Origin: Podarcis liolepis
Taxonomy: Eukaryota
Length of the DNA stretch: 64,000 bases
NCBI GenBank assembly: GCA_965112155.1
Contig: OZ218102.1
Reading direction: 5' to 3' (one strand)
Part shown: positions 14,601-47,971 of the stretch, in pieces
Layout: every line of letters begins with the position of its first letter
Numbering within the stretch: position 1 is the stretch's first letter
Position numbers and translations under genes: made by a program
The notes under the pieces: model-generated
Told to the model about the DNA's origin: nothing
Database searches by the model: none
Seen by the model: only the letters and a program-made list of their open reading frames with translations

Positions 14601-14817
14601 TGCACAGCTCCGCCTCTCGCCGTCCCTCCCGCGAGTCAGTGCCGGAGCCCGGCGCTCCAGCGTGGGGACGCCCTGGGGGGATGCGGCTCCCACGAAGGCA
14701 ACCCGCCCCCTCCCCTTGTGGTGGAGATGCCATTCACTGAGGAAGCCTGAGCGTTGAGGCTGGGGGCGAGCGAAGCAGCTGCCGGTTGAGGAGGGGATCG
14801 CGCTGGGGGAGCGGGTC

Positions 14818-14838
14818 GTCAGCACCGCGGACAGCGCT
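14818..14838 (+). promoter_or_regulatory. RE1/NRSE (REST-binding site) 1
   Basis: GTCAGCACCGCGGACAGCGCT, 18/21 to consensus TTCAGCACCACGGACAGCGCC. Confidence 0.85.
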
Positions 14839-14876
14839 AGGCGGGGCGCTTTGCCCCCGACTCCTGCGCCTCCCAT

Positions 14877-14897
14877 TCCAGCACTAAGGACAGCGCA
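14877..14897 (+). promoter_or_regulatory. RE1/NRSE (REST-binding site) 2
   Basis: TCCAGCACTAAGGACAGCGCA, 17/21 to consensus. Confidence 0.65.
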
Positions 14898-15131
14898 GAA
14901 CTCTCCACGCCCGTTGCCCACCGCGCTTCCCCGCCGCGGACGCCGCCCCAGCCCTGCGGGTGGCAACAAGCTCCGGGGAGCCGAGCGCTTCCTCCGCCTG
15001 CGGCAACAGGGACATCGCCCTTAGGTCGGCTTCCTGGGAAAGGAGGAGCCGTCGTCACCAACCTGCTCTAGCCTCGGCTTCGGACTCCCGGGCTCCCGAG
15101 CAGCGTGGAGCAACCACGCTGGCAGCACAAC

Positions 15132-15143
15132 ATGGCAACCGAG
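15132..15143 (+). CDS. GOLGA7B: GOLGA7B coding exon 1 (MATE)
   Basis: aacATGGCAACCGAG|gtgagc: good Kozak context and donor, inside the CpG island. Confidence 0.92.
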
Positions 15144-15799
15144 GTGAGCAGCGCGGGGAAAGCAAGAAGCACAGGAGGAAGCTCTGTCGAGTCATGGCAG
15201 CCGCCGGGAAGCATCTCCTCCTGCCTTGCCTGCCTAGTTTCTGCCCGGTGCGGTAGGAGATCGCCAGACCAGGCGACCCTCACCGAGGCTGGCTGCTCCG
15301 GCACCGCATCCTCTGGGTTTGTTCTGCAGGCCCCAGAAGTCCCTTGTGCCTCCGACTTCAGCGCGGGTTAAAGAAAGGCAGCGCCGAGAGCCTCCGGCGT
15401 GTGTCTGGGGCTAGGGTGGTTGGCATGTCATGGCTCCCTCCCCCAGCTTGGCGCTTCCCCTGCTCCGCAATCCTGGGTCACTAAACAAGGCAGGGCATTG
15501 CTAATAGAGAACGAGACCTCGCTATGCTCAGTGGCTGAGGCAGCGTGTTTCTATGGGTGCAGCGCAGAGTCTCATGGCAGTACCTGCCAGCGTCAGGCAA
15601 GGGTCAGGAGGACGACAAGAGGAAGCCACAGGGCGAGGACAGCAGCACCCCGATGCTTCCCCAGGCTGTCCTTTGCATGTGGCTCTGGTGATGGAGGATG
15701 AGACCACCTGTGGCATACGACTCTCCTCTTTAAGTGTGGGTCCCATTAACCAGCTTTGTGAATCACCGGCAGCCACCCCCATTGCTCCGTGTGGAAGGT

Positions 15800-15950
15800 C
15801 TCAGTAGTAGAGCCCTGGGACCTCCAGGTAGGACTGAGAGAGACCCCTGCCTGAAATCCTGGAGAGCCATTGCCAGCCAGTGTGGGCAATACTGAGCTAA
15901 GATGGACCAATTATGTGGCACAGCATAAGGCAGCTTCCTAGGTTCCTATG
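15800..15950 (+). mobile_element. Squamate SINE fragment (Squam3-like 3' part)
   Basis: Similar to the copies at 29504-29920; tail GGCAGCTTCCTAGGTTCCTATG. Confidence 0.55.
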
Positions 15951-17299
15951 TGGGGTTCAGAGCAGAGCAGAAAGGGTGGGGGAACGGGGATCCAGCAGCG
16001 CGATCTGCCCAGGTGTCCTATAGCCAGGAGCTCTCCAAAGTCAGCTCCTTCATCTTACACCTCAAGTCCATCCCTTAGGGCTGTTCTCCACAACCTATGC
16101 TCTTCACCTTCCCCCTCCAGCGCCACAAAACAAGGTCTTGTTTACTGTCGTTGTTGTGCTGCTGCCGATGCAGCACCGAGCAGGCGAAAATGGTCTGAGC
16201 CGGAATGGGAACTACCGAAAGGTTGTTACTAGGGGAAAGGCGGCAGTTTCTAAATGCGGGTGGTGCGGCGCGCGGGGGGGGGGGGGGTTGCAGCCTGCTA
16301 CTAACGCCACAGCAAGGCATCCCTGTAAAAGGCCAAAGCATCTGAGCACACGGTGCGCCCTGAACCCCTCCCCTGTAGAGTAGACCACTTCCCCTTCCTG
16401 CTAGGAAAGTCAATAATTTTTATCCCAGCAGATCTTCAGCATCGCAACCCTTGTTGTTGAGGTTAGGACCTCGGTTGACTCCCATCTTGCACATGCTCAG
16501 ATTAAATAACCCTTGACTTGAGCCCAAACCCTCTTGGGAAAAAACGAGGGCTGTTCCAAAATCCAGGTAGAAAACAACTGCTGACTTTCTCAACATCTAG
16601 AATGATTTATGAATCTGGAGGACCCGAGATCCAATATAACAGAGCATGTGGGAAATTTAATGAGGTCAGAACCCGAGGCATACCTTTTTTGAAGTCTTGT
16701 AAGGAGACGTCTAATAGGAAGGAAAGGTGTGTGCTCCCTGCCAGACAGGGTGGGGGCTGCTTGCAAACTGGGAAGAAATATAAGATTTCATCATGCCTCT
16801 AAATAAAGCCAGCATCAGACTGCGAACAGGCAGGATGACAGATTATCCTACACTTGCTTCCCAGGGGATCTGAAATGCCTCTTGGAAGGTTTGAAACTGG
16901 GCTGAAAGGATTTCTAGATTATATATACTGGGCAGCTACAGAAGTTTAAAAAGGTAAAGGACCCCTGACAGTTAAGTCCAATTCCACAAAGCTCATTAGA
17001 AACTAAAGTCAGTGGGATGGACCCTGGAGCTAAGAGGTGTGCAGTTCCATATCGATTCTTAATCACTCTGGGATTCATCACAAATAGGAGAGGAATAGCT
17101 TGAGACACAAAATCTGCTGCCACCTCTTGGAATTATCCGTCACACAGCTCTAACTCCCAGCAATCCTATTCAGGATTTTGCAAGCTGTCAGTTGGCATAT
17201 ACTGCTGCAGTTAATTTCTGTTTTCTTTCTGTTACTCCATTCTACAGTACATCTTTCAGTGTTGGTTTTAACGTTTTGGACCTGCTATGTTTCAACTCA

Positions 17300-20684: not shown

Positions 20685-20810
20685 GTCCACAATCTCCAAG
20701 AACTACGGCGGAGTGCTTCCCTGGCCACCAAGGTCTTTGTTCAGCGGGACTACAGTGACGGGACCATCTGCCAGTTCCAGACCAAATTCCCTCCAGAGCT
20801 GGACAGCCGG
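20685..20810 (+). CDS. GOLGA7B: GOLGA7B coding exon 2
   Basis: ctgccag|GTC...CGG|gtacag; [42 protein letters not shown] (126 nt). Confidence 0.97.
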
Positions 20811-21255: not shown

Positions 21256-21408
21256 ATTGAGCGGCAACTTTTTGAAGAAACTGTGAAGACCCTCAACAAC
21301 TTCTATGCGGAGGCTGAGAAAATAGGGGGCAGCTCCTACCTGGAGGGATGTCTGGCCTGTGCCACAGCCTACTTCATCTTCCTCTGCATGGAGACCCGCT
21401 ATGAGAAG
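21256..21408 (+). CDS. GOLGA7B: GOLGA7B coding exon 3
   Basis: caaag|ATT...AAG|gtttgg; [51 protein letters not shown] (153 nt), includes the Cys cluster. Confidence 0.97.
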
Positions 21409-23786: not shown

Positions 23787-23888
23787 GTTCTGAAGAAGAT
23801 CTCCAAGTACATCCAAGAGCAGAATGAGAAAATCTATGCTCCTCGAGGGCTGTTGCTGACAGACCCAGTGGAACGGGGCATGCGAGTT
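23787..23888 (+). CDS. GOLGA7B: GOLGA7B coding exon 4
   Basis: caccag|GTT...GTT|gtatccttcc; [34 protein letters not shown] (102 nt). Confidence 0.97.
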
Positions 23889-26616
23889 GTATCCTTCCTG
23901 GTTAGCACCAAAGGGGAAAGATATGGTCACTATATAGATCACTCTTCTTACCCATGTGGCTGACTCTCACCAACACACACACACGACCATTTCCTGTGTC
24001 CCAGTTGAGATTCTCTGCTCCAAATTCAGCATTCAAGCTCAAAAAAGAAGTTGCGGGATCGTACTACTTAGTCTACTTACTTATTTTACAGTGTTTGTTT
24101 ACTGCTTTTGAACCACAATGGCTCTCAAAGCAGTTCACAAAAATAAAATCAGATCTACAGGCAGATGATATTACTCCACACAGCAACAAATCTGGACTCC
24201 CAAGTGCTATCAGTGATATTTCGAACAATAGCATTGTGTGACTCTGCTCCCTTGACAAGAGTTGGGGGAAATGGGGCAATATAAGGCTGAAGTTTTTAGG
24301 AACATAGGAAACTGCCTTATATGGAGTCAGACCATTGTCCCATCTTGCTCAGTACCACTGAGCTATGACCCTTCCTAACTGCTGCTCACTTTTCTGCTGC
24401 TCTCAGCAGATGGGATCAGCTGGTTTGAGGCACAGTGTGTGGACAGTGATGTCTAAAGTAACCCCCCAATTCCCTTTGCTGGTGTTGCTGCCTCCCCAGG
24501 TTCACCACAGTGCCACAGGAAATGACCCTTGCTCCCAAAGGGGCTACCAGGCCTATGCTTAGCAGCCAGAGGTTTATGGTCTTTGTGAAGGCAAGCTTCT
24601 TCACCAGAGGTTGTGTCCAGCTATTGCGGCTTCTGGCTCTGCTCCCTTGAAGGGATGTGGTGGCCAAGAAGAAGTGGGTACTGAAAGGCTCATGTGTTCC
24701 CTCCAACCCACCAAGCATTCCTGCTGCCTCTAGTGCTGCCAGGACTCACAGTTTCCTGAACTCGTCAGCAAAATGTATTTTAGCCTTCAAAAACACCAGC
24801 AAAACACCGGAGGGATTATAAAGGATGTGCTTGGGATGTGTTTGTTTAGAGCTTTAAAACTTTGCTCTTCAGATGAAAAAGGCTCGCAAAGACCAGAAAT
24901 AAAACAGTCCCTGCCCTCGGGCTCACAATCTAGGGGACACAGCACAAAATGAAAGAGATTTGGGAGGGAAGAGGTAAAAGCAAAGTCAGGTGCAAGTTTT
25001 TAGTTACAAAGAACATCTCATAATGGAAGGCAGTAGCATATAACTTTAGGGCTGTGCCTGCAAGAGTGAGCATGCAATACATTCATGGGGCAACGACTAC
25101 TTTTTGTGTAAGGAAAGATTAACTGTCTTATCATGTGCCTGCTTACTCTCTCAAACATAAGTTTCACTTAGTTCAGTAATACTTACTCCCAAGTTAATAA
25201 AGCATTGCACGCTTTCAACTATTTGGCTTAGATAAGTGGTGGTTAAGGAGTGGAAGTAGACAGATATGAAACTATGACTATGGAGCAACCTTCTTTCACC
25301 TTCTGTGTGATATCATACAGCAGGAATGGAAAACCTGTCACCCCACAGATGTTCTTAGGTTCCAGCTCCCATCAGCGCCAACCAACTTGGTTGGCCAATA
25401 GACTGGGATTATGAGATGGAAGCCACAGATTAAGCGCTCGTCCACACTTCTGCTTGTCATGCCACTTTCCCTGGGGTAATGCAGCTCTTTACCGCTGAAT
25501 CGGAGCAAATGTCGATTGGGTTTTCCATGGACTGACACTTGCTCCAATTCAGCGGTAAAGAGCAGGTTTTCCTGGGGAAAGAGGTGGGGCAAACAGAAAA
25601 CCTCTGGGACCTGTTCTTTCTAGGCGAGGGATAAGTGGAAGTGAGCAGATGCTCCAGCAACACAGGATGCCAACCCCTTCTGTAGAAGAAGGCACCTGAT
25701 GTCAGATAAAAACAGATGAGGCATATTTTTACCCAGTGCATAGTTGACTTGTGGAACCACAACAACATGCATTTGAGACAAAGCAACTGCCTGAAAGGTG
25801 TGCTGTCATTTCATATTTCAGCTGCACATGCCAAACTGTCTGAGGTTGGAACAGTCAGGAACTTGCTCTTACCAGATCAGCTGATGTCTTACAACAGGGG
25901 TGAGGAAACTTCTTAAGTCTGAGGCCTCGTTTCCTTGTGGGGAACCTCCCAAGGGCTACTTGCTAGTGGTGGGTGATGCCAGAGGCAAAGCTGGGTGAAA
26001 GATCAGATGGGACTCTTCCAGCATAAATCGGAGGTTTATATACACACATCTGTCCAGCCAGGCAGAAGAACTCAAGGTGGACATACAGCAAGATTGTCCC
26101 AGGAGGGGCATGGTCTAGGGCACGGCTGTCAAACACAAGGCCCACGGGCCGAATCCAGCCTGCCAGACCTCGTCATGTGGCCCGTGTAGCCGGCCGCCAG
26201 CCTTCACCTTTTATTCTCGCTTCTTTTTTTTTTTTTTGACACAAGAAAGCCGCCTCTTCAGCGCATGCGTGGCAGCCTACAAGCCAGAGAATGTCTGCCC
26301 TCTAGCGGCGCCGGCCGTTCTACACAGGAAACCTCCACTTTACATGCATTCCTACAGATACAACTGGCCCTTTGAGGGTGACCAAACTGCTGATGCGGCC
26401 CCCGATGAATTTGAGTTTGATACCCCTGGTCTAGGGAGTTTCCTAGAGGCTGGATGGAGAGATCTGGAGGGACACAGTTGGCCCCTGGGCTGGAGGTTCC
26501 CCACCCTGTCCTACAGCATTGTCAAGCTCAATGTGCATTTGTGGCTGCTGAACAGGGGTGTGTGAGGCTACTAGCTCTCCTTGTTCCCTGTGTCCTCCTT
26601 ATCCTCTTGCCCACAG
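23889..26616 (+). other. GOLGA7B: U12-type (minor spliceosome) GT-AG intron of GOLGA7B
   Basis: 5' splice site GTATCCTTCC; branch-point-like TCCTTATC about 13 nt upstream of the acceptor AG. Confidence 0.85.
26121..26428. mobile_element. hAT (Charlie-like) non-autonomous element
   Basis: TIR CACGGCTGTCAAAC / GTTTGATACCCCTG, perfect 8-bp TSD GTCTAGGG; sibling at 35618. Confidence 0.92.
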
Positions 26617-26724
26617 ATCGAGATCTCCATCTATGAGGATCGTTGCAGCAGTTCCAGCTCTGGCAGCTCAAGCAGCAGCAACAGCAGTGCTGGCGGCGGG
26701 GGTGGGGGAGCCGGGGGCCGGTGA
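26617..26724 (+). CDS. GOLGA7B: GOLGA7B coding exon 5 (to first TGA)
   Basis: ccacag|ATC...CGG TGA; IEISIYEDRCSSSSSGSSSSSNSSAGGGGGGAGGR*. Confidence 0.96.
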   Translation: MEISIYEDRCSSSSSGSSSSSNSSAGGGGGGAGGR

Positions 26725-26814
26725 CTGGCACAGAGTCCCGGCAGGGATTTGTACTGCCGGGACGACGGTGTCTCCGAGATCCGCAGACTGCGCTACCAGA
26801 GCACCCGCTTCTGA
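26725..26814 (+). CDS. GOLGA7B: Candidate stop-codon readthrough extension of GOLGA7B (LAQSPGRDLYCRDDGVSEIRRLRYQSTRF*)
   Basis: TGA-CTG context; 10-bp stem 26735-26744/26754-26763; GC3 24/29; 8 CpGs; PDZ-ligand-like end. Confidence 0.55.
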   Translation: MAQSPGRDLYCRDDGVSEIRRLRYQSTRF

Positions 26815-28646
26815 GCAGCCCCAGGGGGGTTGGGGTGCCGGCAAGGAGGGTTGTGACACCCCTGGGGAGGGGCTTCTGACAACCAGCGGGGGGCAAAGTC
26901 CTTCTAAAGAGGATGCTTGGCCTCAGCCCCAAATGAGCCCAGTCTCCCCATGGCTCAAAACCTGGATAACCTGAATTGACACTTCCTGTGGGCTCCTGGG
27001 GACACTCCTGCCCACCCCCTCCCCGGGATGTCCAAATGTGTCATTGTCCAAGTCCTGTCCTCACAAGCTGCAGGTACACAAATACCCCGTCCGAATGCAC
27101 CCTCTTGCTCAAGGTCAAATGACCAGTAAAGATCAGCCCAGCATGGTGAGGTGGGATGGGGTGGGGTGTGGGTGAGGGAACTGGTGGTTTTGGGACCCTC
27201 TGACAAGCCTTTCCCTGAGCACCAATGTCCTCTCCCCTCCTGCATTGGCACTGACCCCCTATCCTAGCTCCTGTCTTTTGCTTGCTGCTGTGCATGCCAT
27301 TCTCCTGGCACTTTAGGCATGGTCTGAGCATTCAACGTCCACAGTGCTGTGGTGGGGCCCCTGCAAGTGCTTTGCCCACCCTCCCGTCCCTCCTGCAGGG
27401 TGCTGGTACTGGCAGAGACGTGCCCTCTCACAGATTCCAGGATGGACTCTGTACTAGGGCACATGCCTCATGCTCTGGATCCTTCTGAGGCAACAGAGGG
27501 ACAGGGGCATTGTATGGAGCCACAGGAGGAGGTGAGGCAGCACAGTCCCCCTCTGCAGCACGGATCCTGTCGAGAACTATATAGTCTTCCAAAGTTGAAA
27601 GACTGCACCTTGCCACCTCTGACCAGCTGCAACAGGTTTTCCAGTTCAACCAGGGATCGTGGAGAGCATCAGAAGATGGGAGATGTTGGAGGTGCTTTAG
27701 TGGAGAGGCCTCTGGCTCCTCAATTCCTCAGCTCATCCCAGTCCAATAAGCATCTTTGGGATTATGTATGTAAATATTTAATATAGCCCTGGCTACCAAA
27801 GCTCCACCCCTCCCTTCACCCTTACACCACATTTGGCAAACAGAAGAAAGAGGAAGGAGGATGAAAACTCCGAGGTGGGTATGGAACCCTGCAACATTTG
27901 ACCCACTTCCCTAGTGCACCTTATCACTTGCATGCACAAGTTGTCTCCTTGCTGCATGTTCCCTCTCCCTCCTTCCTGTAAATAGCTACCCGGGCCCCAC
28001 ATGCGTATGTTTGAGACCCTCTTGGTTCTGTACCTCTTCTCTGAGTCCCCAGTGCCATTCTGTGAAATGAGATGGGAAGGCAAGGGGGAGACGACTGAGC
28101 CACTGGGTCAGTGGACTGGGCCGCCCAATGAACAGGCGTCCAAACCTTGGGCGAAGCCTACCACCACTTCTGGCAATGGACAGCAGTTCCAAAAATGTTT
28201 CCAGCTTCTCACACACCACACGTCCCATGCACAGCTAGATGTCCTTGTGGGGGTCACTCAGTATAAGACTTTGTTTGCACCCAGCTGTGGAGGGGGAGAT
28301 TGTTGGAGGGTAGACACTAGGCTGTTTTGGATGCTTGGCTGGGCAAACTCAGCAGTCACTCCACTACTTCGTCAGTGCTCCAAACTTCTTGATTTCAGAA
28401 TGGGATTTCCTCCTTTTTGATGGTGGGGATGAATGTGTTTGGAGAGTGACCAGACCCTGACTGTGCTGCAGGGAAATGGGAGAGCTGCAGAGGGCATCAC
28501 AAATGCATAGAGGTTAAGCCAATGTGACCCTGGGAGGGTTTCCCTCTGTACCCAGATGCCCTGAGAAGCTGCTCCCCATGCCATATATTGGACTCATGGA
28601 TCTGGTCATAGTTGTATCCCTCTGACTCTACATGAAAATTTCTGAC

Positions 28647-28652
28647 AATAAA
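28647..28652 (+). terminator. Candidate GOLGA7B polyadenylation signal
   Basis: AATAAA about 1.9 kb after the stop, followed by a GT/T-rich tract; a second AATAAA lies at 28701. Confidence 0.45.
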
Positions 28653-29503
28653 CTAGAAGTGAGAATCTACCAGTGTTGTTTTCTTCCTATCCGTTCTCTT
28701 AATAAATAATAGACCTGGCTCCTGCACATATATTTCATTCACAGCCACCCATGCTGTTGTCTTAAGGCTGCATAACCTATTAGTAGTGATGGTTCCCATG
28801 AATTAAAATATAAAAGTATAGTATGCATTGTCTGGATGATTGAGAACTATCAGCAGGCTTACACTTTTAGGACCCTGTTCTGCTTTAATTGGACCTTTAT
28901 TCGTATGCTTGATTCTAGAGCCACTGATGCGTGGTTGAAGTATGCATTTAACATTTACCTGGTGCTAACACTGCTCTTGAAACAAACAAGACAGATGCTG
29001 GGATCATGATTGCACCAGAGATTTTGCTGGTTTCGTATGTACTATGCAGGTTTGAAGATATCAATGGAGCTGATGTTCAGCTGACCTGCTGCCTGGCTTG
29101 GTGGTACTCATACACAGGTAGGTCTGCAGGCAATTGCTCTAAGTCTAAAGCTAGCAAATGAGCTTCATCAACAGAGACAGGTTTTCACATGCAGATTGTC
29201 TCACTGATGTGACCTATGCAAAGAAACAGAGTCGGGTTTGTGTAAAAGGCCCTGTATCCTTCCAGCACTCAGAGCTTTGCCCTTGACAGAGATGACCATG
29301 TTAGCCAAAGTTAGTTTGGATTAATGTGGGAATTATCCTATAACTTTTGTGAATTAAAAAAAATGTGAACAGTCAGAAGACCTCAGACATCCCCCCCCCC
29401 AAAAAAAACCAGAGGACTCAGAAAATAGTATTTGTTCACCTACCCAGAAACTGCCCTCCATCAGCCTTCTTCCCCCCAAACAAATCTCCCCTTTCTTCCC
29501 CTT

Positions 29504-29920
29504 TAGGAACATTGGAATCTGCCTTATATTAATTAAGCCAAACCACTGGTCCATGTAGCTCACTATTGTCCACACTGGCTGGCAGCAGCTCTTTAGGGTT
29601 TCTAGCAGGAGACTCTCCCGGTGCTACCTGGAGATTCCGTGGATCGAACCTGAGACCTTCTGCTTCCAAGGCACATGCTCTGCCACTGAGCTATGGCCCT
29701 TCCCCAAGCCAGGTGTCGTCTTTTGATGGAGAAGAGCCACAGCTCCATGGCAGAGCATCTGATTTGCTTGAAGAAGGTCCCCGGTTCAACCCACAGCACT
29801 TTCAGGTAGGGCTGGGAACACACACCCTTCGCCTGAACCCTGGAAATCAGTGTAGGGAACACTGATCTAGATGGACCAACAGTCTAACTCCATTTAAGGC
29901 AGCATCCAATGTTCCTATAT
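29504..29920. mobile_element. Two head-to-head tRNA-derived SINEs (Squam3-like): ~29504-29705 (-) and ~29728-29920 (+)
   Basis: A/B-box-like heads (GCTCAGTGGCAGAGC...GGTTCGATCC) and shared tails. Confidence 0.7.
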
Positions 29921-30030
29921 TCTCTTGAAGCCATGCTGGCACTGGGAGCTTCAGGAGAGGCAGGTGGGGAGAAGAAGGTTTCCCTTCCACCTCTTCCCCA
30001 TTGCTGTACCATGCTAGGTAGCAGCATCAT

Positions 30031-30031
<1 letters not shown>

Positions 30032-30061
<30 letters not shown>
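30032..30061. repeat. (GT)n microsatellite
   Basis: Read directly. Confidence 0.9.
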
Positions 30062-30072
<11 letters not shown>

Positions 30073-30202
30073 GGAGGGAGGGAGGGAGGAGTTAGTTAGG
30101 GAAGTTTTTAATGTTTGATGTTTATTGTGTTTTTAATATTCTGCTGGAAGCCTACCAGAGTGGCTGGCGAGGCCCAGCCAGATGGGGAGGGGTATATGTA
30201 AT

Positions 30203-30246
30203 AAACAACAACAACAACAACAACAACAATAATTATTATTATTATT
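30203..30246. repeat. Compound (AAC)n/(ATT)n microsatellite
   Basis: Read directly. Confidence 0.9.
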
Positions 30247-30524
30247 TACCATCATCATCAAATCAGTAGGTTTATATTCCATTTTCTGATTGGTGTCCTT
30301 CAAGCTGCTCACACCATGTATAAAATACAAATGGGGACATTAAAAGACCCGAGTGGATGCCAACATTACATAAATAGGTTTCTGTTCGAGCTGCAGGCTG
30401 TCCCCTTCCTATCTTTCTCCCCACCCCATGCACCTCCAGAATAGATTGGTATATATATATATATATATATGCAGGTTTTGGTGTCCTCGGGTGTCTTCCC
30501 GTGTAAAAGTTGGGGTGTCTAGGC

Positions 30525-30558
30525 GACGTTTCGACGAGGTCTCACTCGTCATCTTCAG
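30525..30558 (-). ncRNA. Hammerhead ribozyme core, inverted-arm copy
   Basis: Exact reverse complement of 31259-31292. Confidence 0.7.
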
Positions 30559-31258
30559 GCTGGTGCTTTCGGCTTCTTGTTACTGGAACAGAGCGGGATC
30601 TCAGTGTTTGAGTTCCTATAAATACTGTAGAGGGGTGTGGTGTATTGCCTCAAAAGTTCTGGGCAGAGGGGAAGTTCCCAGGCTAGTGTTCTTTTCTTCT
30701 TTTGTTCCTTAATTACTTGAGGGATATCTTGAGTGATTTCTTGAGTGATATTCTGAGTACCACTTAGGTGGGTCATTAGGTGTGGATTAGTTGCTAAAGC
30801 CTTCGTGTCTTGACCTCTTGAATTTGTGAAGAGTTTTTCTGGGAAGATGGCTGTACTGCACTTAGTTGTGCTTTGGCTTGGCTTCGTGTATAGGGGCACA
30901 GGGCACAAAACCACAGCTCGCCCCTATACACGAAGCCAAGCCAAAGCACAACTAAGTGCAGTACAGCCATCTTCCCAGAAAAACTCTTCACAAATTCAAG
31001 AGGTCAAGACACGAAGGCTTTAGCAACTAATCCACACCTAATGACCCACCTAAGTGGTACTCAGAATATCACTCAAGAAATCACTCAAGATATCCCTCAA
31101 GTAATTAAGGAACAAAAGAAGAAAAGAACACTAGCCTGGGAACTTCCCCTCTGCCCAGAACTTTTGAGGCAATACACCACACCCCTCTACAGTATTTATA
31201 GGAACTCAAACACTGAGATCCCGCTCTGTTCCAGTAACAAGAAGCCGAAAGCACCAGC

Positions 31259-31292
31259 CTGAAGATGACGAGTGAGACCTCGTCGAAACGTC
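31259..31292 (+). ncRNA. Minimal type I hammerhead ribozyme core (PLE-type)
   Basis: CTGAAGA-T-GACGAG(TGAGAC)CTCGTC-GAAA-C-GTC. Confidence 0.75.
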
Positions 31293-31373
31293 GCCTAGAC
31301 ACCCCAACTTTTACACGGGAAGACACCCGAGGACACCAAAACCTGCATTCCTGTACCCGTGAAAATCTACGAA

Positions 31374-31416
<43 letters not shown>

Positions 31417-31564
31417 TGAAAAATAAAAGGTAATTGTACAACATTTTCAAATTAACACTCCATCATCCACATTTGACTTCCCATCCACCCCTCCATGGTT
31501 TCCTCAAAATTCCAATTCTGCTGCATATCATAATTATTCTATGCTTTAACTTCTTCACATAAAA

Positions 31565-31624
31565 CTCGCTTCGGCAGCACATATGCTAAAATTGGAAATG
31601 ATACAGAGAAGATCAGCATGGTCC
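31565..31624 (+). pseudogene. 3'-truncated U6 snRNA retrocopy
   Basis: CTCGCTTCGGCAGCACATATgCTAAAATTGGAAatGATACAGAGAAGATcAGCATGGtCC matches about U6 nt 4-62, including the ACAGAGA box; the 3' half is absent. Confidence 0.9.
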
Positions 31625-31989
31625 AGAGTAGATTATGAGGGTGTGCAGGGGCAGCAAGGGGAAGGAAAGAAAGATGAAGTCCCACAGCTTGTGTGAAAGT
31701 CCATTCTGCTCATCTGCAGACAGCAGTGGATATACTTTAAAACAACAACTGTGCCGCTGAAACAGGCACCTGGTGTTCTATCCCCCCCCTTTATGTTTAT
31801 TACTTAAATAACACAATTTTAATAGTACAGAACAATCCCTGCCTCATAACATAGAGGGGAAAAGGGGAGTAAAATAAATTTTAAAACATTTATCCGTCAG
31901 AATAGCCCATCAGGAAGTACCAAAATTCAAACCTACAATGTTCAAAACAGCCAGAAAATTTTGTATACTTCTGGGATATTTCTTTGCAT

Positions 31990-33060
31990 TTCATCTTTGC
32001 TTGCATAAGCAATAGAACAGTGCCAATCTGCTGCAAAAGAATCTTTATACTTCTTTAGATTATTCATTAATTTATCCACCCAAGTGACTTGCCAGCCCAT
32101 CTTATACCAATTAGCTTCTGAGGCACTCTTTCAGTCCATTGAGCAACAACTTGCCACGCAGCAGCAAGAATCTATCCAATTAGAGGTTTGGAATGGCCAT
32201 CCCCATTGTTGTTTTGAAGAAGAAGAAAAGTTTAACAAGAACAATTCTGGAGATTTCATCACTTATTGTCCAGTCATTACAGGAATTTTTGCAAAGACCA
32301 CAGTCCAAAACTGTGACACTTTTTCACAAGTCTAGCACATATGCTGGATTGACATTGGTTCCTTATATCCTCTCTAACACAGTTTCAAACTAGTATCATG
32401 GACAGGCTGGAGGCAGAGGAGTAGTGGGAGGCACCAGCTGGGGAACTCCCAAGGGAACCACCAGGGGAAGAAGGCTCAAAGCCAGGGGACTGGTGGTGGG
32501 ATGAGAATGAGTGGTCAGAGGGAGAAAGGGGAACAGACTGAAGGGAGGGGGCGTCGGAAGCTGAAAGGGTCAGAGGCTTTAGTGAGCAGGAGGAGGCTGT
32601 GGCAGAGAGCAGCCCAGAATCAGACAGAGGCAGAGGCTGGAGAGGAGGGGAGCCAAGAGGCAGAGATCAGGCAGGTTGCTGAATGAAGCCAGGGAGCCTT
32701 CCTCTCCCTCCTGGTCTCCCAGAACCCATGGAGGTATGAAAAGGAGCATCGACAGACACGGCAAAGAAGTCTCAGGTTGCATAGGAAGGAGACTTAGGGA
32801 GTTGTGGGGAAGTGGGAGCGTTCAGTCCTTGCAACTGCCTCAATGGGGCAAGATCTGCTGGAAAGAGTTGCTGTGCTCACTGGGCCTGTCTTTCTGAGCT
32901 GTTTGTTTCTTTGAATAAAGAGTTAATGTCACGGACGCCTTGTGAGTTATTGTTTATCTGCTCCCACCTCCCTCCTTGACAATTAGATATATTCATTTGA
33001 AACAGTCTCGTACCATTTCTGCACACTTTTTCATGTTCGTTCCCTCATACCAGATGATGC
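31990..33060 (-). mobile_element. L1/Tx1-like ORF2 C-terminal (zinc-finger) fragment, split by a solo-LTR-like insert
   Basis: Minus strand: ...KSVQKWYET... then C*RGYKEPMSIQHMC*TCEKVSQFW..V...I...G......PELFLL. Confidence 0.7.
32394..32981 (+). mobile_element. Solo-LTR-like element
   Basis: TATCA...TGACA ends, near-TSD ACTAG/ATTAG, internal AATAAA; related fragment at 56640-57068. Confidence 0.6.
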
Positions 33061-34028
33061 TGATTTAATGGGCAGCTTTAACCACATAGAATTCCAACTA
33101 CTGCCTTGATTCTCTTCTCCTCAGGCTAGTTGGTGTTAGGTGGCCTGGGAGTGGCAGTCTATCGGGAGTGTGAACTTGGCATTGCCCTCACTTGCTTTCC
33201 ATGGATCATTTGGTGCCAAGGCTTATGTAGGCCGGCCTTTGCTGCCCGCTGCTTGCTGGGCTACAACTCCCATCAGCCCTAGCCAGCATGGCCAATGGTC
33301 AGGAATGATGGGAGTTATAGTGCAACATCTTGAGGGCACTAGATTGGGGAAAACTGATGTTGATCTTCTGCTGTGCTAGGCCCCAGCCTCTCTGTGCCTT
33401 CACCAAGATCTCAGTTATTCAGAACTTACAGCAGTGTAATAATACATATCAGAAAAGCATGTGAACTAAGCCAGATAAGAGTTTGGGGGCTTGTAACACT
33501 TGCCTCTCATTTAAAGTGGGTTTTATGAGCCCCCAGAGTTCATTTCTGAGCCTCATATGGCTCACGAGAACTTCACCAGCATCTCTAGTCCCTGGTGGCT
33601 CTTGCTTGATCAAGTTTGTGCAAGACTTCCCTGACAGGTGATCAGCATGGTCAATGATCTACTTGCCTGGGAGCCAGAATTCTTAATCCAAGCTTTCCCT
33701 TTGCTCTGTCTCCACCCTCAAAAGCTGGTAGTTGGCATTATTAAATCAAGGAGCATTGACCACAGAGAATGTGTGCATAGGGATGCTCATTCATGGCCAA
33801 CTGTAGCATGCAGGGGTATGGGGACTGGGACCAATACTGTGGCATGGATTGCAGCGATTCAGAGAAAACCTATGTGTGAATTCATTCCCCCCCCTTGAAA
33901 TATTCTAACCATGAGGTTGCAAAGCCCTGCAGGTCTTCTGAAATTCATGTTTGTATCACAGCACCCTCAAGTGGTGAAGGATTTTAAGAGGCATAACCAG
34001 GGCTATACAGTATATTATATATATATAG

Positions 34029-34072
<44 letters not shown>

Positions 34073-34077
<5 letters not shown>

Positions 34078-34254
34078 GGTTTTGGTGTCTTCGGGTTCAG
34101 AGCTCTGTTTCAGTAACAAGAAGCCGAAAGCACCAGCCTGAAGATGACGAGTGAGACCTCGTCGAAACGTCGCCTAGACACCCCAACTCTTACACGGGAA
34201 GACACCCGAAGACACCAAAACCTGCATTCCTGTACCCGTGAAAATCTACGAAAG

Positions 34255-34258
<4 letters not shown>
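34073..34258 (+). mobile_element. Second, shorter Penelope-like insertion in (TA)n
   Basis: Same 3' sequence and tail as ~31220-31380; 24-bp inverted start; (TA)n flanks. Confidence 0.85.
34138..34171 (+). ncRNA. Hammerhead ribozyme core, third copy
   Basis: Identical to 31259-31292. Confidence 0.72.
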
Positions 34259-34302
<44 letters not shown>

Positions 34303-34799
34303 TCATAATCTCAGCTTTTGTGGTTTTTGAAAAATGAAGCCTCTAGCCCTTTTGGCTGTGAAGGTGTGCTGAAAAGCAACGTGGGCAATATCTGCTGAAA
34401 TCTCAGGACCTGGAAAGGTAGCTGTATAAGTTTAGCAGCAGCAGAGGAACAAGTCTTCCGTGTTCTTTGCCCTTCCGACGACTAGCAAAGGCAGAATAAA
34501 TTATGCAAAATATAAATAATTGAAGAATGAATTATGCAAAATAAGAGAAGTGTACACATTCCCCCAACCTGCATAATTTATATAGATTGCAGATTTCGGC
34601 ATTGGCACTAAAAATATTTATTTATTCAGTACACCAAGTCCTTGCCATAGCCATGGATTGTCTCCATGGAAAACCTTACATTATTTTAAATAACAGTAAT
34701 AGCAATAATGTAGAACCACAGATTTCTACTTTTGAATGCCCAATCTATGGATGACTCTCTTTTCCACCATGTTGGACCATGTTTACGCAAACAATTAGA

Positions 34800-34935
34800 A
34801 GGCATAATAGAATAGAGACTCTTGATCCCAGAGTCTTGGGTTCAATCCCCGTGTTGGGCACAAGATTCCTGCATGGCAGGTGATCGGACTATATGTCTCT
34901 TGTGGTCCCTTTCAACTCTACAATTCTACGATCCT
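34800..34935 (+). mobile_element. tRNA-head/CR1-tail SINE (POM-like)
   Basis: GGGTTCAATCCCC B-box followed by CR1-like tail GGTCCCTTTCAACTCTACAATTCTACGAT. Confidence 0.6.
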
Positions 34936-35617
34936 TGGAATATGGTGCAACAATATCCTTTATTGTTTGATCAGTGATTCATCATGACACTGGTTGTTGG
35001 TCCAGTAAAAGGTCTTATTGATTCTGTGCCTCTGTTTCTGTAGGACCAACACAGCAATAAACACTGCACAATAAATGCTGTAAATCCATATCAACTGTAT
35101 AAACTATGACAGGCTGTGTTTGTGTTCAGAACAGTATGAATGGATAACTATTTTGTGTTGTGTTTTTAAAATGTGGTTCTGTTAAAGGCCCACTCATCCC
35201 TTGATGAATGTAACATCAGGTGATGACTTCCACGGGTGAAACAGTCATCACAGATCAACTACAGCAAGACAGAACATTCAAACTACCTAATATAACTCTG
35301 GGCACAATATTTTTCACACATTTATCTGAGAGCCATGAAGTAATATCAGTGAGTGATGAACTATCAAATGATATATAAGGAAGTGTGAATCCATCCTATG
35401 AATCTCTTCCATCCATCTGAAGATCACACAAATGAGCTGCTGGAAAGGTCAAGACCCTTTGCCTCTGGGAGATGGATACTCTTTAGTTTTATTGACTCTT
35501 GTGTCAGTGAGAGCTGCGCTTGCTATCGCCTTCTTTTACCTATCTTCCACATCAGCTTTATTTCCTTATTTCCCATCAACTTCCACAGAAGGCATCATCC
35601 TTTTCTATCTCCTAGAA

Positions 35618-35994
35618 CACGGGTGTCAAACACAAGGCCCGCCAGACCTCGTCATGTGGCCACCGCCGGCCGCCAGTCTTCACCTTTTATTCTCACTTTT
35701 TTTTTTTTACACAAGAAAGCCGCCTTTTCAGCGCATGCGCGGCAGCCTACAAGCCAGAGAACGTCTGTCCTCTAGCGGCGCCAGCCGTTCTACACAGGAA
35801 ACCTCCACTTTACATGCATTCAGGAAACCTCCACTTGTTTTTATATTGAGCGCATGCCATCCTGTGATGTGACAGATCCAACGGCTGCCTGAACCCTTCT
35901 CTCCTGTACTGTAAGTCCTACAGATACAAACGGCCCTTTGAGGGTGACCAAACTGCTGATGCGGCCCCCGATGAATTTGAGTTAGACACCCCTG
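35618..35994. mobile_element. hAT (Charlie-like) non-autonomous element
   Basis: TIR CACGGGTGTCAAAC / GTTAGACACCCCTG, perfect TSD TCCTAGAA; same family as 26121. Confidence 0.92.
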
Positions 35995-36294
35995 TCCTAG
36001 AAAGACCAAACCTGATTTAGATAGCCCAATAGCCTGATCTGCTCTTCTGCAGCTACCAATGTACCTGGGGACCAGGCTGATGGAGCAGTTCCACATGCAC
36101 CAGAGGCTGGAGTCTAGGGTAAGGAGTGCCATTCAGTAACAGCTGATTGGAGTGTGCTTGTGTTAAAAAATGGCATGTGGCATTGCTTGTATGAATCTGA
36201 AGGAAGTGACCAAACACAGGCAGGTGCCTCAAAGGGGTTGTGTATAGTCCTGCTAACTTAGCCAGGAGTTTCTGCTGGACTCTGTCTTTATGGG

Positions 36295-40486: not shown

Positions 40487-40617
40487 TCAGCTCTTCACAC
40501 AGCGCCGCCTGTCTGCCCCCAAGGAGAAGCCTTGCTGGCAGTGGCAGTGGAAAGAGCCAGGCTCATTGTGGCAGATGTGATCACAGGGGCCCGGTCTTTC
40601 TCTGCACTCATTTACAT
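40487..40617 (-). CDS. CRTAC1: CRTAC1 distal terminal cbEGF exon
   Basis: ctgtttttcag|AT; DVNECRERPGPCDHICHNEPGSFHCHCQQGFSLGADRRRCVKS* (6 Cys, CxNxxxxFxCxC); AATAAA on minus at 40270-40275. Confidence 0.85.
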
Positions 40618-41005
40618 CTGAAAAACAGAAGGAAGAGACATATTTCACCCAGTGGGAGGAGCAGATGCCAGCGGGGATTTCAACAGAGTGCCCAGCAGCA
40701 AGGAAAACCAGCTCCTTGGAGCCTACTCCTTGCAGCTGAAAAAATGAAAAAATGATGCCTGCAGCAAACGGTTACCCTACTCCCTATTATTGCAAGAGGT
40801 AGTCGCTGACCCAGCTCTTCCACAGTTTTGTGCCATGAAACACCTCAGAGAGACCTAGAAGAGGACATGCTATGGCAATGCCTGCCACCATGGAAGGTCT
40901 GGGGGTCTGGCTCATTGCTTGCAGACTTTTTGGAGCAACAGCTGCTGGCCTGCTCAGTAGACATTGGCTACTATTTTTTAAAACACCCCCCCCCCAATGT
41001 ATATA

Positions 41006-41339: not shown

Positions 41340-41419
41340 TACTACTTGTTTGTAATAAAAGCTTGCAGTGGTTTACAAAAAGGATTAAAATATTAATAAA
41401 AGACAGTTTAAAAACTTAC

Positions 41420-41545
41420 CCAGGCACTTGTTGGCATCTTGGGGATCAGTCTTGAAGCCAGGGTGGCACTGGCAGGAATGCCCACCCTGTGTGTTGACAC
41501 AGACGTGACTGCAGTTATGCAGACCATAGGTGCACTCATTTATGT
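41420..41545 (-). CDS. CRTAC1: CRTAC1 additional cbEGF exon (phase 1-1)
   Basis: ccag|AC..G|gtaagt; DINECTYGLHNCSHVCVNTQGGHSCQCHPGFKTDPQDANKCL (126 nt, 6 Cys). Confidence 0.85.
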
Positions 41546-46807: not shown

Positions 46808-46926
46808 TTAAAGTGCATAGGAGTGAAAGCAGAGTCCGAGGCAAAGTGGAAGAAGAGGGGCAGAGGGCAAGATGGGGCCCAGCCAGCTCCCTGAGGAAGG
46901 GTATCCACCAAAAAAGGCCACTTGAG
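46808..46926 (-). CDS. CRTAC1: CRTAC1 proximal terminal exon (CRTAC1-B/LOTUS-type hydrophobic C-terminus)
   Basis: Long pyrimidine tract, gcag|CT; AQVAFFGGYPSSGSWLGPILPSAPLLPLCLGLCFHSYAL*, resembling the recalled mammalian CRTAC1-B tail (AQVAFLGGY...LGLCLQLYAL). Confidence 0.9.
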
Positions 46927-47559
46927 CTGCACAGAGAGGGAAACAGAAAGAGAGACAGAGAGAAGGAAAGAGAAAGACAAAGACAAGGCAAGAGTTAGTG
47001 GCAGTTGGCAAAGAGGAAGGTCTTCAGGGGCTGAACCAAATGTTTGCTGCCTGACAAGGGCCTGGTAACCCTACCTACCATTGAACATACAGAGGAAAGC
47101 AACAGGTGTGTGTGTGGGGGGGGACTAAGCACCCATTTCCACACATCCCTGCAAATTGCACTCTTTGCCCACTGCTTTGCAGCTGTTCGGCAACTATTAC
47201 GCTTTTCCAGACCCATGCCTGATGCCAGATGTCATATTTGGCCCAAAGGTATACTTTACTGCTTCTCCTCCTTTGCTCAGGCATCCTAACACAGCATACA
47301 AAGCAGGCGCTACAGTGTCCCCCACCCCACCCCATGCCATCTTCTCATTGGTCAACGTACAGAGATCGTGATTCCAAGCTCAGGACCTCACTGGCTTCAC
47401 TGCTTTCCCTTGCTCCTTCCCTTCTTGGGATTATGAAATAAAGAAAACCCAGCCTCAGGTAAACTTTTCACCGCTCGGGTGGCTTCAAGGGAGGGCTCAG
47501 CCCCTGTGGGGAGCGCCTCTCTTTCTCCCTCCCTCTGCTCTGCCAAAGCCATCACTCAC

Positions 47560-47703
47560 CAACGCAAGCTGTGCCGTCCTCGTTGGGCTCAAAGCCGCGA
47601 TTGCAGCGCTTGTTGCTGCGGCAACGGTACCCGCCATATGTGTTGATGCAGATGGGCCTGCCCCTGGGGCAGACAAAGGGGAATTCTGCACACTCATCCA
47701 TAT
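47560..47703 (-). CDS. CRTAC1: CRTAC1 exon 14 (EGF-Ca domain)
   Basis: DMDECAEFPFVCPRGRPICINTYGGYRCRSNKRCNRGFEPNEDGTACV G|gtgagt (144 nt). Confidence 0.96.
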
Positions 47704-47971
47704 CTGAGAAAGGGGGCAGAGGGCGGGGGGAGGGAGGGAGGGGGGTAAAGAGAGAGAAAGAGAGTGTGACGGAGGCCCAGGACAGGACAGAATCTAACAA
47801 CAGCCTCTTAACACCACGGTTGGGCTGTTCCTTTATCCCCAGAGACTACCGCTGTGCGGCTGTGGACGGCTGCCACAAAGAGCCCGCCTCGTGCCCCATT
47901 AAGCCCAGTTGTGGGTAGAGGAAATTGCACCCGAGCACCATTCACTGAGCTGGCCCTTGCAGGTGACTCAC

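What the first reader, a model, noticed from the sequence alone, without database searches (positions are those of the whole stretch)
26722..26814. Candidate programmed stop-codon readthrough in GOLGA7B adding a PDZ-ligand tail
Seen: the stop is CGG-TGA-CTG-G. After a 10-nt spacer, a perfect 10-bp stem forms (GTCCCGGCAG 26735-26744 / CTGCCGGGAC 26754-26763, 9-nt loop). The frame stays open for 29 codons, LAQSPGRDLYCRDDGVSEIRRLRYQSTRF, then TGA. G/C fills 24/29 third positions and there are 8 CpGs in 87 nt, far denser than the UTR that follows. Established: UGA-C(U) is the leakiest stop context; stem-loops about 8-12 nt 3' of a UGA stimulate readthrough (alphaviruses, SELENON SRE); C-terminal S/T-x-hydrophobic is the class I PDZ ligand; GOLGA7B partners ZDHHC5. 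From recall, the human CRTAC1-A tail GTLGQSP is encoded antisense to this spot, implying the bases just after the stop are conserved from lizard to human. Inference: a ~196-aa GOLGA7B isoform could tether the palmitoyltransferase complex to PDZ scaffolds. I do not recall this being described, but could not search.
Basis: partly seen in the sequence, partly recalled or inferred. Interest (0 to 1): 0.92.

Follow-up and report, generated by a model that had tools for sequence, protein, structure and literature searches.

The report
Conserved post-stop frame in GOLGA7B
The 29 codons after the GOLGA7B stop codon are strongly conserved between lizard and bird and probably form a stop-codon readthrough tail, which was already suspected in human in 2019; the same bases also serve the CRTAC1 gene on the opposite strand, so translation is unproven.

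Summary
These are the stop context CGG-TGA-CTG-G, a 10-nt spacer, a perfect 10-bp hairpin, 29 open codons, a second TGA, GC3 of 24/29 and 8 CpGs.

The open frame itself proves nothing. 48% of local stops are followed by at least 29 open codons, and 5 of 6 frames are open here.

The conservation is what matters. A bird contig (L002) has the same TGA-CTG-GCA, the same 29 codons without indels, the same second TGA and the identical ending YQSTRF. Alignable sequence stops 2 nt after the second stop.

The 87 nt evolve about tenfold slower than neighbouring synonymous sites, without overall codon periodicity (omega 0.77).
- Codons 1-6 follow the antisense CRTAC1-A frame (pN/pS 0.12).
- Codons 7-29 lean to the GOLGA7B frame (0.44, against 3.8 for antisense).

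The idea is not new. Mudge et al. [quoted passage not shown]

Weak points: the context is UGA-CUGG, not CUAG; the hairpin is only partly conserved; no translation data could be obtained.

Verdict: credible, unverified readthrough candidate overlapping the CRTAC1-A 3' splice region (about 45%). The scan index holds only this same stretch and a sister note, no other DNA.

The parts
15132..15143 (+). GOLGA7B exon 1 coding part (MATE), followed by a GT donor; boundary inferred
   Evidence: ORF translation; matches the N-terminus of squamate GOLGA7B proteins P0003 and P0152
20685..20810 (+). GOLGA7B exon 2
   Evidence: Pfam Erf4; tblastn with P0155; aligns to bird L002 991-1116
21256..21408 (+). 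GOLGA7B exon 3
   Evidence: Pfam Erf4, E = 7e-10; 100% identical stretch in P0003
23787..23888 (+). GOLGA7B exon 4
   Evidence: Pfam Erf4; tblastn
26617..26721 (+). GOLGA7B exon 5 coding part, after acceptor cacAG
   Evidence: 100% identical to the C-terminus of P0155; sequence
26722..26724 (+). Annotated GOLGA7B stop codon TGA, followed by CTGG. It is the reverse complement of a Ser codon (TCA) in the antisense CRTAC1-A frame
   Evidence: identical CGG TGA CTG GCA in bird L002 2082-2093
26725..26811 (+). 29-codon in-frame post-stop ORF ending in YQSTRF; the candidate readthrough extension
   Evidence: bird orthologue L002 2088-2174 has the same length, 73/87 nt identical; human counterpart listed as a PhyloCSF candidate region
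26812..26814 (+). Second in-frame stop TGA. It lies at the distal edge of the conserved block and overlaps a minus-strand ctcAG
26735..26763 (+). Hairpin: arms 26735-26744 and 26754-26763, 9-nt loop, -22 kcal/mol
   Evidence: the bird keeps 9 of 10 pairs with a central U.C mismatch (-19.1 kcal/mol)
26671..26922 (-). Open antisense frame A, with codons that are exact reverse complements of the sense codons. This is the CRTAC1-A-type tail reading, ending ...GTLCQSP... before antisense TGA 26670-26668
   Evidence: the bird's homologous frame runs on through the antisense of GOLGA7B exon 5
26739..26740 (-). Position of the bird-type CRTAC1-A acceptor: tgcAG|GGAC in the bird, but CG in the lizard, so the AG is absent. 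The same base completes the lizard's perfect stem
26753..26755 (-). Candidate minus-strand acceptor ggcAG|TA (exon start 26753), phase-1 compatible with frame A, shared with the bird
26810..26812 (-). Candidate minus-strand acceptor ctcAG|AA (exon start 26810), phase-1 compatible, shared with the bird, at the conservation boundary
47555..47704 (-). CRTAC1 EGF_CA exon; starts and ends in phase 1 (…GTT G|gtgagt)
   Evidence: Pfam EGF_CA, E = 4e-13; sequence; matches PDB 9etn_A 'Cartilage acidic protein 1'

Best explanation
The 87 nt after the GOLGA7B UGA are a deeply conserved in-frame extension. It is the lizard orthologue of the region listed in human as a suspected GOLGA7B stop-codon readthrough.

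Proposed mechanism (inferred, not shown):
- A small fraction of ribosomes decode UGA-C with a near-cognate tRNA.
- A GC-rich stem-loop about 8-10 nt downstream helps them.
- They add 29 residues and stop at the second UGA.
- The result is a protein of about 196 aa ending in QSTRF-COOH, which fits a class I PDZ-ligand pattern.

The same bases lie on the opposite strand in the 3' splice region and first codons of the CRTAC1-A terminal exon. This second layer explains why all three codon positions are conserved.

Shown here: the anatomy, the lizard-bird conservation, the sharp boundary at the second stop, and the split substitution pattern.

Inferred: translation, its level, the stimulatory role of the hairpin, and any PDZ binding.
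For: - Bird L002 keeps CGG-TGA-CTG-GCA, 29 codons without indels, the second TGA and an identical last 21 nt.
- blastn alignability runs from the exon-5 acceptor to 2 nt past the second stop. The rest of the 3'UTR is unalignable, and identity after the stop is 23/87.
- The rate in the block is about 0.18 per site, against dS 1.71 in the adjoining CDS.
- In codons 7-29, sense pN/pS is 0.44 against 3.76 for antisense.
- Mudge et al. 2019 Suppl. [quoted passage not shown] The same table lists the known readthrough genes MPZ, OPRK1 and OPRL1 at ranks 498, 742 and 752.
- UGA followed by C is a weak stop context.
- GC by codon position is coding-like: 0.59/0.52/0.83, against 0.56/0.36/0.68 in the CDS.
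- Stable local structure exists in both species.
Against: - Over all 29 codons there is no codon periodicity: differences are 6/4/4 by position, omega 0.77. Omega of 0.2 or less is rejected at p = 0.013.
- The lean toward the sense frame in codons 7-29 rests on 10 substitutions and is not significant.
- Frame preservation is expected at this level of identity (P = 0.61).
- The context is CUGG, not CUAG. PhyloCSF candidates with stem-loops but without CUAG (SACM1L, ACP2) gave little readthrough in HEK-293T cells.
- The 10-bp stem has a mismatch in the bird and no compensatory change. The bird's z-score is -0.27.
- No protein of 95-303 aa in the database carries the tail, apart from one odd Gnomon model.
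- No Ribo-seq, mass-spectrometry or reporter data are available, and only one orthologous DNA sequence was obtained.
Confidence: 0.45

Rival explanations
1. The block is conserved for CRTAC1, not for GOLGA7B. It would be the 3' splice region (branch point, pyrimidine tract, tandem AGs and a hairpin that pairs the two AG-containing arms) plus the first codons of the alternative CRTAC1-A terminal exon. It would help choose between the A and B terminal exons. The open GOLGA7B frame would be a by-product, because sense stops correspond only to the rare antisense codons TCA, TTA and CTA.
For: - On the bird minus strand, tccctgcAG|GG opens a frame that runs antisense through GOLGA7B exon 5.
- In codons 1-6, antisense pN/pS is 0.12 while the sense frame has 0 synonymous and 4 nonsynonymous changes.
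- Sense synonymous sites in codons 7-29 are still about 2.6 times more conserved than CDS synonymous sites.
- Both hairpin arms carry a candidate AG.
- The two genes overlap in human, and the A/B terminal-exon choice is regulated.
- The TGA and CTG after it are also fixed by the CRTAC1 codons Ser and Gln.
Against: - The lizard lacks that AG (it has CG), yet it keeps the block at 84% identity.
- Conservation extends 75 nt upstream of the bird acceptor and ends exactly at the GOLGA7B-frame stop.
- The published PhyloCSF signal is on the + strand and passed an antisense filter.
- Codons 7-29 lean to the sense frame.
- No canonical minus-strand poly(A) signal lies within 2.7 kb of the lizard's antisense stop.
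Confidence: 0.3
2. The block is an untranslated cis-element of the GOLGA7B 3'UTR placed directly after the stop. It would be a structured protein-binding or localisation element, and ribosomes would terminate normally.
For: - Constraint is uniform over codon positions, with omega between 0.59 and 1.05 in all six frames.
- Structure potential is present in both species.
- There is no CUAG.
Against: - Such an element has no reason to end at an in-frame stop or to keep a coding-like GC3.
- PhyloCSF scores codon substitution patterns, not conservation alone.
- There is no Rfam match.
- No covariation supports a specific fold.
Confidence: 0.12
3. The block is antisense coding only. Sauropsid CRTAC1-A would use the distal acceptor ctcAG|AA at 26812-26811, so the whole block would be CRTAC1 coding sequence.
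For: - An AG with an upstream pyrimidine-rich tract is shared by lizard and bird.
- It is phase-1 compatible with the EGF exon and sits exactly at the conservation boundary.
- Frame A is open.
Against: - Frame A shows 1 synonymous against 9 nonsynonymous changes in codons 7-29 (pN/pS 3.76).
- Its third positions differ at 6/29 against 64/141 in real CDS (p = 0.014).
- The lizard frame stops early, at 26670-26668.
Confidence: 0.08

Closest known systems
Human GOLGA7B PhyloCSF candidate coding region chr10:97865716-97865787(+) (Mudge, Jungreis et al. 2019, Genome Res, PMC6886504, Suppl. Data S1)
   Same: Same gene, same place directly after the stop, + strand. Its 72 nt equal 24 codons, which fits codons 6-29 of the 29-codon extension seen here. 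It is noted as a suspected stop-codon readthrough.
   Different: It is only a line in a supplementary table, not annotated and not tested. The human sequence itself was not examined here.
SACM1L and ACP2 readthrough candidates (Loughran et al. 2014, PMC4132726)
   Same: Conserved UGA, a PhyloCSF-positive extension, a stable stem-loop shortly 3' of the stop, and no CUAG motif.
   Different: Those gave little readthrough in HEK-293T reporters. GOLGA7B additionally overlaps a coding exon of another gene on the other strand.
OPRK1, OPRL1, AQP4 and MAPK10 UGA-CUAG readthrough
   Same: Vertebrate-wide conserved UGA followed by C, a fixed-length conserved extension, and neural expression of the host genes (established knowledge).
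   Different: Those depend on CUAG, and 12 nt 3' of the stop suffice for them. Here position +6 is G (CUGG) in both lizard and bird.
Alphavirus-type and SELENON-SRE-type 3' stem-loop stimulators of UGA recoding
   Different: There is no covariation support here and no SECIS in 9.7 kb of 3' sequence. The stem is imperfect in the bird.

Membership tests
Conserved programmed stop-codon readthrough (vertebrate, comparative-genomics type) | In-frame ORF after the stop, kept in frame and length across distant species, with a conserved second stop | tested here: met
   Lizard against bird: 29 codons, no indels, both TGAs aligned. This is weak on its own, because P(open | 14 substitutions) = 0.61.
Conserved programmed stop-codon readthrough (vertebrate, comparative-genomics type) | Protein-coding substitution signature in the extension (excess of synonymous changes, positive PhyloCSF) | tested here: inconclusive
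   Whole extension omega is 0.77. Codons 7-29 give pN/pS 0.44 for sense against 3.76 for antisense, from only 10 substitutions. The literature reports a positive PhyloCSF region in human alignments.
Conserved programmed stop-codon readthrough (vertebrate, comparative-genomics type) | Conserved leaky stop: UGA with C at +4 | tested here: met
   TGA C is present in lizard and bird. However, TGA and CTG are also fixed by the antisense CRTAC1 codons TCA and CAG.
Conserved programmed stop-codon readthrough (vertebrate, comparative-genomics type) | Evidence of translation beyond the stop (Ribo-seq, peptides, reporter) | not testable with these tools
No Ribo-seq or proteome tool was available.
UGA-CUAG efficient readthrough class | CUAG immediately 3' of UGA | tested here: not met
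   CUGG in both species. The requirement is described.
3' stem-loop-stimulated readthrough | Conserved stem about 8 nt after the stop, supported by compensatory changes | tested here: inconclusive
   The lizard has a perfect 10-bp stem with a 10-nt spacer. The bird keeps 9/10 pairs with a U.C mismatch. There are 0 compensatory pairs; an alternative two-tier fold is kept by 3 one-sided changes.
Class I PDZ-binding C-terminus | S/T at -2 and a hydrophobic residue at the C-terminus | tested here: met
   The tail ends T-R-F before the stop, and the last 7 codons are identical in the bird. This is a pattern only; binding was not tested.
Selenocysteine recoding of UGA | SECIS element in the 3'UTR | tested here: not met
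   No Rfam family reaches its gathering score in 26250-36000.
CRTAC1-A terminal exon (antisense) | AG acceptor in phase 1 with the EGF exon, opening the GT(L/P)(C/G)QSP frame | tested here: not met
   The bird has tgcAG|GG. The lizard has CG at 26740-26739. Two other shared in-phase AGs exist (exon starts 26753 and 26810), but their use is unknown.
CRTAC1-A terminal exon (antisense) | Coding-type substitution pattern in the antisense frame | tested here: inconclusive
   Met for codons 1-6 (pN/pS 0.12) and not met for codons 7-29 (3.76).

The most novel reading that the evidence does not exclude
Both strands are translated over the same 87 nt, in exact codon-for-codon reverse-complement register, and this has been kept since the bird-lizard ancestor or earlier. 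On one strand the bases give a GOLGA7B readthrough tail. On the other, they give a CRTAC1-A tail reached through an upstream in-phase acceptor. One palindrome would serve as readthrough stimulator on one transcript and as a splice-site-sequestering hairpin on the other. The lizard's AG-to-CG change would then shift CRTAC1 to the upstream acceptor while perfecting the GOLGA7B stem.
Probability: 0.1. Interest if true: 0.8.

Novelty: new member of a known kind. Interest (0 to 1): 0.5.

Why it matters
Only about a score of vertebrate genes have credible functional readthrough. A GOLGA7B extension conserved from mammals (published PhyloCSF signal) to birds and lizards (shown here) would add one in a palmitoyltransferase cofactor. 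Its tail looks like a PDZ ligand, which suggests a way to place the ZDHHC5-GOLGA7B complex at scaffolds.

The locus is also a clean example of two genes constraining the same bases from opposite strands. That overlap can mimic or mask coding signatures, so it is a useful caution for comparative readthrough screens.

The candidate has been on record since 2019 and is still untested, so the value added here is corroboration and anatomy, not discovery.

Tried and rejected
The planned set of about 12 orthologous loci could not be fetched.
There is therefore no RNA depth, strand, junction or variant evidence. Those places were sent to no search tool afterwards and were masked in local scripts. The run list showed only very close relatives (word shares 0.3-0.9).
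- A protein search with the 84-aa antisense ORF found nothing. The length window excludes full-length CRTAC1, so this says little.
- A search with the tail of P0214 found only P0214 itself.
- Scans of genome contigs and viral contigs with the exon-5 pattern and with the conserved 22-mer found nothing. L001 from the metagenome scan is a chance hit.
- Rfam found nothing and there is no SECIS, so the selenocysteine reading was rejected.
- The open frame, GC3 and CpG count were rejected as evidence of coding.
- Alternative splicing into the extension frame was rejected as a conserved route. The lizard has cacAG|AGT in phase 0, but the bird's + strand AGs are out of phase. The Calidris model P0214 joins retained intron 4 to the extension and looks like a modelling artefact.
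- Antisense-only coding is disfavoured.
- PDB entry 9etn_A (CRTAC1) lacks the A tail.
Exons were searched one by one by reference. Exon codon counts were only summed in local scripts.

Full report
**What is in the window.** The + strand carries GOLGA7B.
- Exons 2-4 (20685-20810, 21256-21408, 23787-23888) each hit Pfam Erf4.
- Exon 5 (26617-26721) is 100% identical to the C-terminus of Podarcis raffonei GOLGA7B (P0155), so the window comes from a lacertid lizard or a close relative.
- The - strand carries CRTAC1-type exons from beyond 61.7 kb down to an EGF_CA exon at 47555-47704.

The two genes converge. A paper states that the human genes overlap.

**The observation.** All sequence statements hold.
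- The stop context is CGG TGA CTG G, with TGA at 26722-26724.
- A 10-nt spacer precedes a perfect 10-bp inverted repeat (26735-26744 and 26754-26763) with a 9-nt loop.
- 29 open codons follow, then TGA at 26812-26814.
- GC3 is 24/29 and there are 8 CpGs in 87 nt, falling to 0-3 per 87 nt downstream.

Their weight as evidence differs.
- An open run of at least 29 codons follows 48% of stops in this GC-rich 2 kb and 27% window-wide.
- Five of the six frames are open across these 93 nt.
- The hairpin folds better than shuffles in a 69-nt context (z = -2.24) but not in 181 nt (z = -0.80).

**Register with the opposite strand.** The minus-strand frame that reads ...GTLCQSP... is open from 26922 to 26671. 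Its codons are the exact reverse complements of the sense codons. Three things follow from this.
- The GOLGA7B TGA is an antisense TCA (Ser) and the following CTG is CAG (Gln).
- A sense stop can only arise from the antisense codons TCA, TTA or CTA.
- Sense GC3 is simply antisense GC1.

A degenerate exon-5 pattern scanned against metagenome contigs gave L002. This is a non-human contig with all of GOLGA7B exons 2-5 within 1.2 kb. Its exon peptides match bird GOLGA7B proteins.

In L002 the stop is TGA at 2085-2087 and is followed by CTG GCA. There are then 29 codons without any indel and TGA at 2175-2177. The last 21 nt (the last six sense codons, YQSTRF, plus the stop) are identical to the lizard.

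blastn aligns the two species only over the four exons. The exon-5 block runs from 3 nt before the acceptor to 2 nt past the second stop (window 26614-26816). The next 87 nt are 26% identical, which is background.

**How the block evolves.**
- In 141 aligned CDS codons, the lizard and bird differ at 5, 5 and 64 sites at codon positions 1, 2 and 3. This gives dS 1.71, dN 0.03 and omega 0.018.
- In the 29 extension codons the differences are 6, 4 and 4. This gives dS 0.22, dN 0.17 and omega 0.77.
- Third positions are more conserved than CDS third positions (p = 0.0015). First and second positions are less conserved than in the CDS (p = 0.0005).
- No frame among the six shows a coding signature over the whole block (omega 0.59-1.05).
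- Omega of 0.2 or less is rejected for the sense frame (p = 0.013) and for the antisense frame (p = 0.004).

The block is therefore under strong nucleotide-level selection, about tenfold slower than neighbouring synonymous sites. Neither reading frame alone explains this.

Splitting the block is informative.
- Codons 1-6 show 3 synonymous and 1 nonsynonymous change in the antisense frame (pN/pS 0.12). In the sense frame they show 0 synonymous and 4 nonsynonymous changes.
- Codons 7-29 show 4 synonymous and 6 nonsynonymous changes in the sense frame (pN/pS 0.44). In the antisense frame they show 1 and 9 (pN/pS 3.76).

The numbers are small, but the pattern fits two layers: CRTAC1 coding over the first few codons, and a sense-frame constraint plus something else over the rest.

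**The CRTAC1 side.**
- On the bird minus strand, tccctgcAG|GG opens the frame GTPCQSP.... This frame continues antisense through the whole GOLGA7B exon-5 coding region.
- That exon start is in phase 1, like the end of the EGF exon.
- The lizard has CG instead of AG at this site (26740-26739). This same base makes its hairpin perfect.
- The lizard's antisense frame meets a TGA at 26670-26668.
- Two other in-phase AGs are shared by both species: ggcAG|TA (exon start 26753) and ctcAG|AA (exon start 26810). The latter lies exactly at the conservation boundary and overlaps the second TGA.
- Which AG the lizard uses, if any, could not be determined without reads.
- There is no canonical minus-strand poly(A) signal between 23900 and 26668.

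**The hairpin.**
- In the bird, the 5' arm has T where the lizard has G. This gives a central U.C mismatch (-19.1 against -22.0 kcal/mol).
- An alternative two-tier fold is compatible with both sequences through three one-sided changes, but no pair shows a compensatory double change.
- The like-for-like 69 nt of the bird are not unusually stable (z = -0.27).
- Structure potential is thus retained, but a specific conserved stem is not demonstrated.

**Prior art.** No paper text links GOLGA7B with readthrough. However, Supplemental Data S1 of Mudge, Jungreis et al. 2019 (PMC6886504) lists a 72-nt + strand PhyloCSF candidate coding region at human chr10:97865716-97865787.
- It ranks 929 of 73,812 candidate regions.
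- Among the examined regions only three others carry readthrough notes, all known cases: MPZ (rank 498), OPRK1 (742) and OPRL1 (752).
- The pipeline removed regions judged more likely coding on the other strand.
- 72 nt equal 24 codons. This fits codons 6-29, the part not covered by the bird-type CRTAC1-A exon. That match is my inference, because the human sequence was not examined.

The candidate is absent from the supplements held for Loughran 2014, Schueren 2014 and Loughran 2018.

**Other traces.**
- A Gnomon model for Calidris pugnax (P0214) ends in the extension peptide, joined to a read-into intron 4. This is most likely a modelling artefact. It shows the same tail in a third species.
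- A Strigops isoform (P0029) reads the same DNA in the +1 frame.
- A database search with the P0214 tail found no other protein of 95-303 aa carrying it.
- Rfam has no match and there is no SECIS.

**Assessment.** The most likely reading (about 45%) is a real, low-level UGA readthrough extension of GOLGA7B. It would be conserved from mammals to sauropsids and superimposed on the CRTAC1-A 3' splice region, which supplies the extra nucleotide-level constraint.

Points against this reading:
- The context is CUGG rather than the CUAG shown to be needed for efficient vertebrate readthrough.
- Earlier stem-loop candidates without CUAG performed poorly in reporters.
- The codon evidence obtained here is weak.
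- There is no translation evidence.

The main rival (about 30%) is that the block serves CRTAC1 terminal-exon definition and the open frame is incidental. A pure 3'UTR element (about 12%) and antisense-only coding (about 8%) follow.

The PDZ-ligand idea rests only on the conserved T-R-F-COOH pattern.

**Procedural notes.**
Exons were searched separately by reference, and exon codon counts were only summed locally.
- No contig taken for human was kept or compared.

Noticed in passing
window 41388-41618 (-) and 40490-40771 (-): Two further EGF_CA exons (Pfam E = 3e-10 and 2e-10) lie on the CRTAC1 strand between its EGF exon and GOLGA7B. Each begins with a D-x-N-E-C motif. They would keep phase 1 toward any terminal exon at 26.8 kb.
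   Followed up: partly
window 46811-47023 (-): An open frame just downstream of the CRTAC1 EGF exon reads AQVAFFGGYPSS... and ends in a hydrophobic stretch. From memory it resembles the membrane-anchored CRTAC1-B (LOTUS) alternative terminal exon. It has no Pfam hit.
   Followed up: partly
window 26668-26670 and 26739-26740 (-): Relative to the bird, the lizard lacks the AG of the CRTAC1-A-type acceptor (it has CG). It also has an antisense TGA, opposite a GOLGA7B TCA serine codon, that would cut the tail short. The lizard CRTAC1-A tail therefore either uses another acceptor or is not made. A sister note exists (s1-844468).
   Followed up: partly
P0214 (Calidris pugnax), P0029 (Strigops habroptila): Public gene models translate the post-stop region by odd routes. 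P0214 joins retained intron 4 to the extension frame and ends in ...LHYQSTRF. P0029 shifts frame in the poly-Gly tract and reads the +1 frame for about 130 residues.
   Followed up: partly
P0160, P0162, P0163, P0171, P0167 (mammals): Several mammalian GOLGA7B isoform models leave exon 5 inside the poly-Ser tract and continue in unrelated Pro/Ser-rich sequence. This suggests an annotated alternative donor within exon 5.
   Followed up: no
L002 987-2177: The bird GOLGA7B is extremely compact: exons 2-5 lie within 1.2 kb and intron 4 is about 120 nt, against 6 kb for the same span in the lizard. Several public bird models (P0202, P0209) mis-read the tiny intron 4 as coding.
   Followed up: no
window 14001-16000: A CpG island (GC 0.59, CpG observed/expected 0.60) surrounds GOLGA7B exon 1 (ATG at 15132). 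The alternative MGAGSSS... first exon of the Podarcis isoform X1 (P0155) was not found in the window by tblastn.
   Followed up: partly
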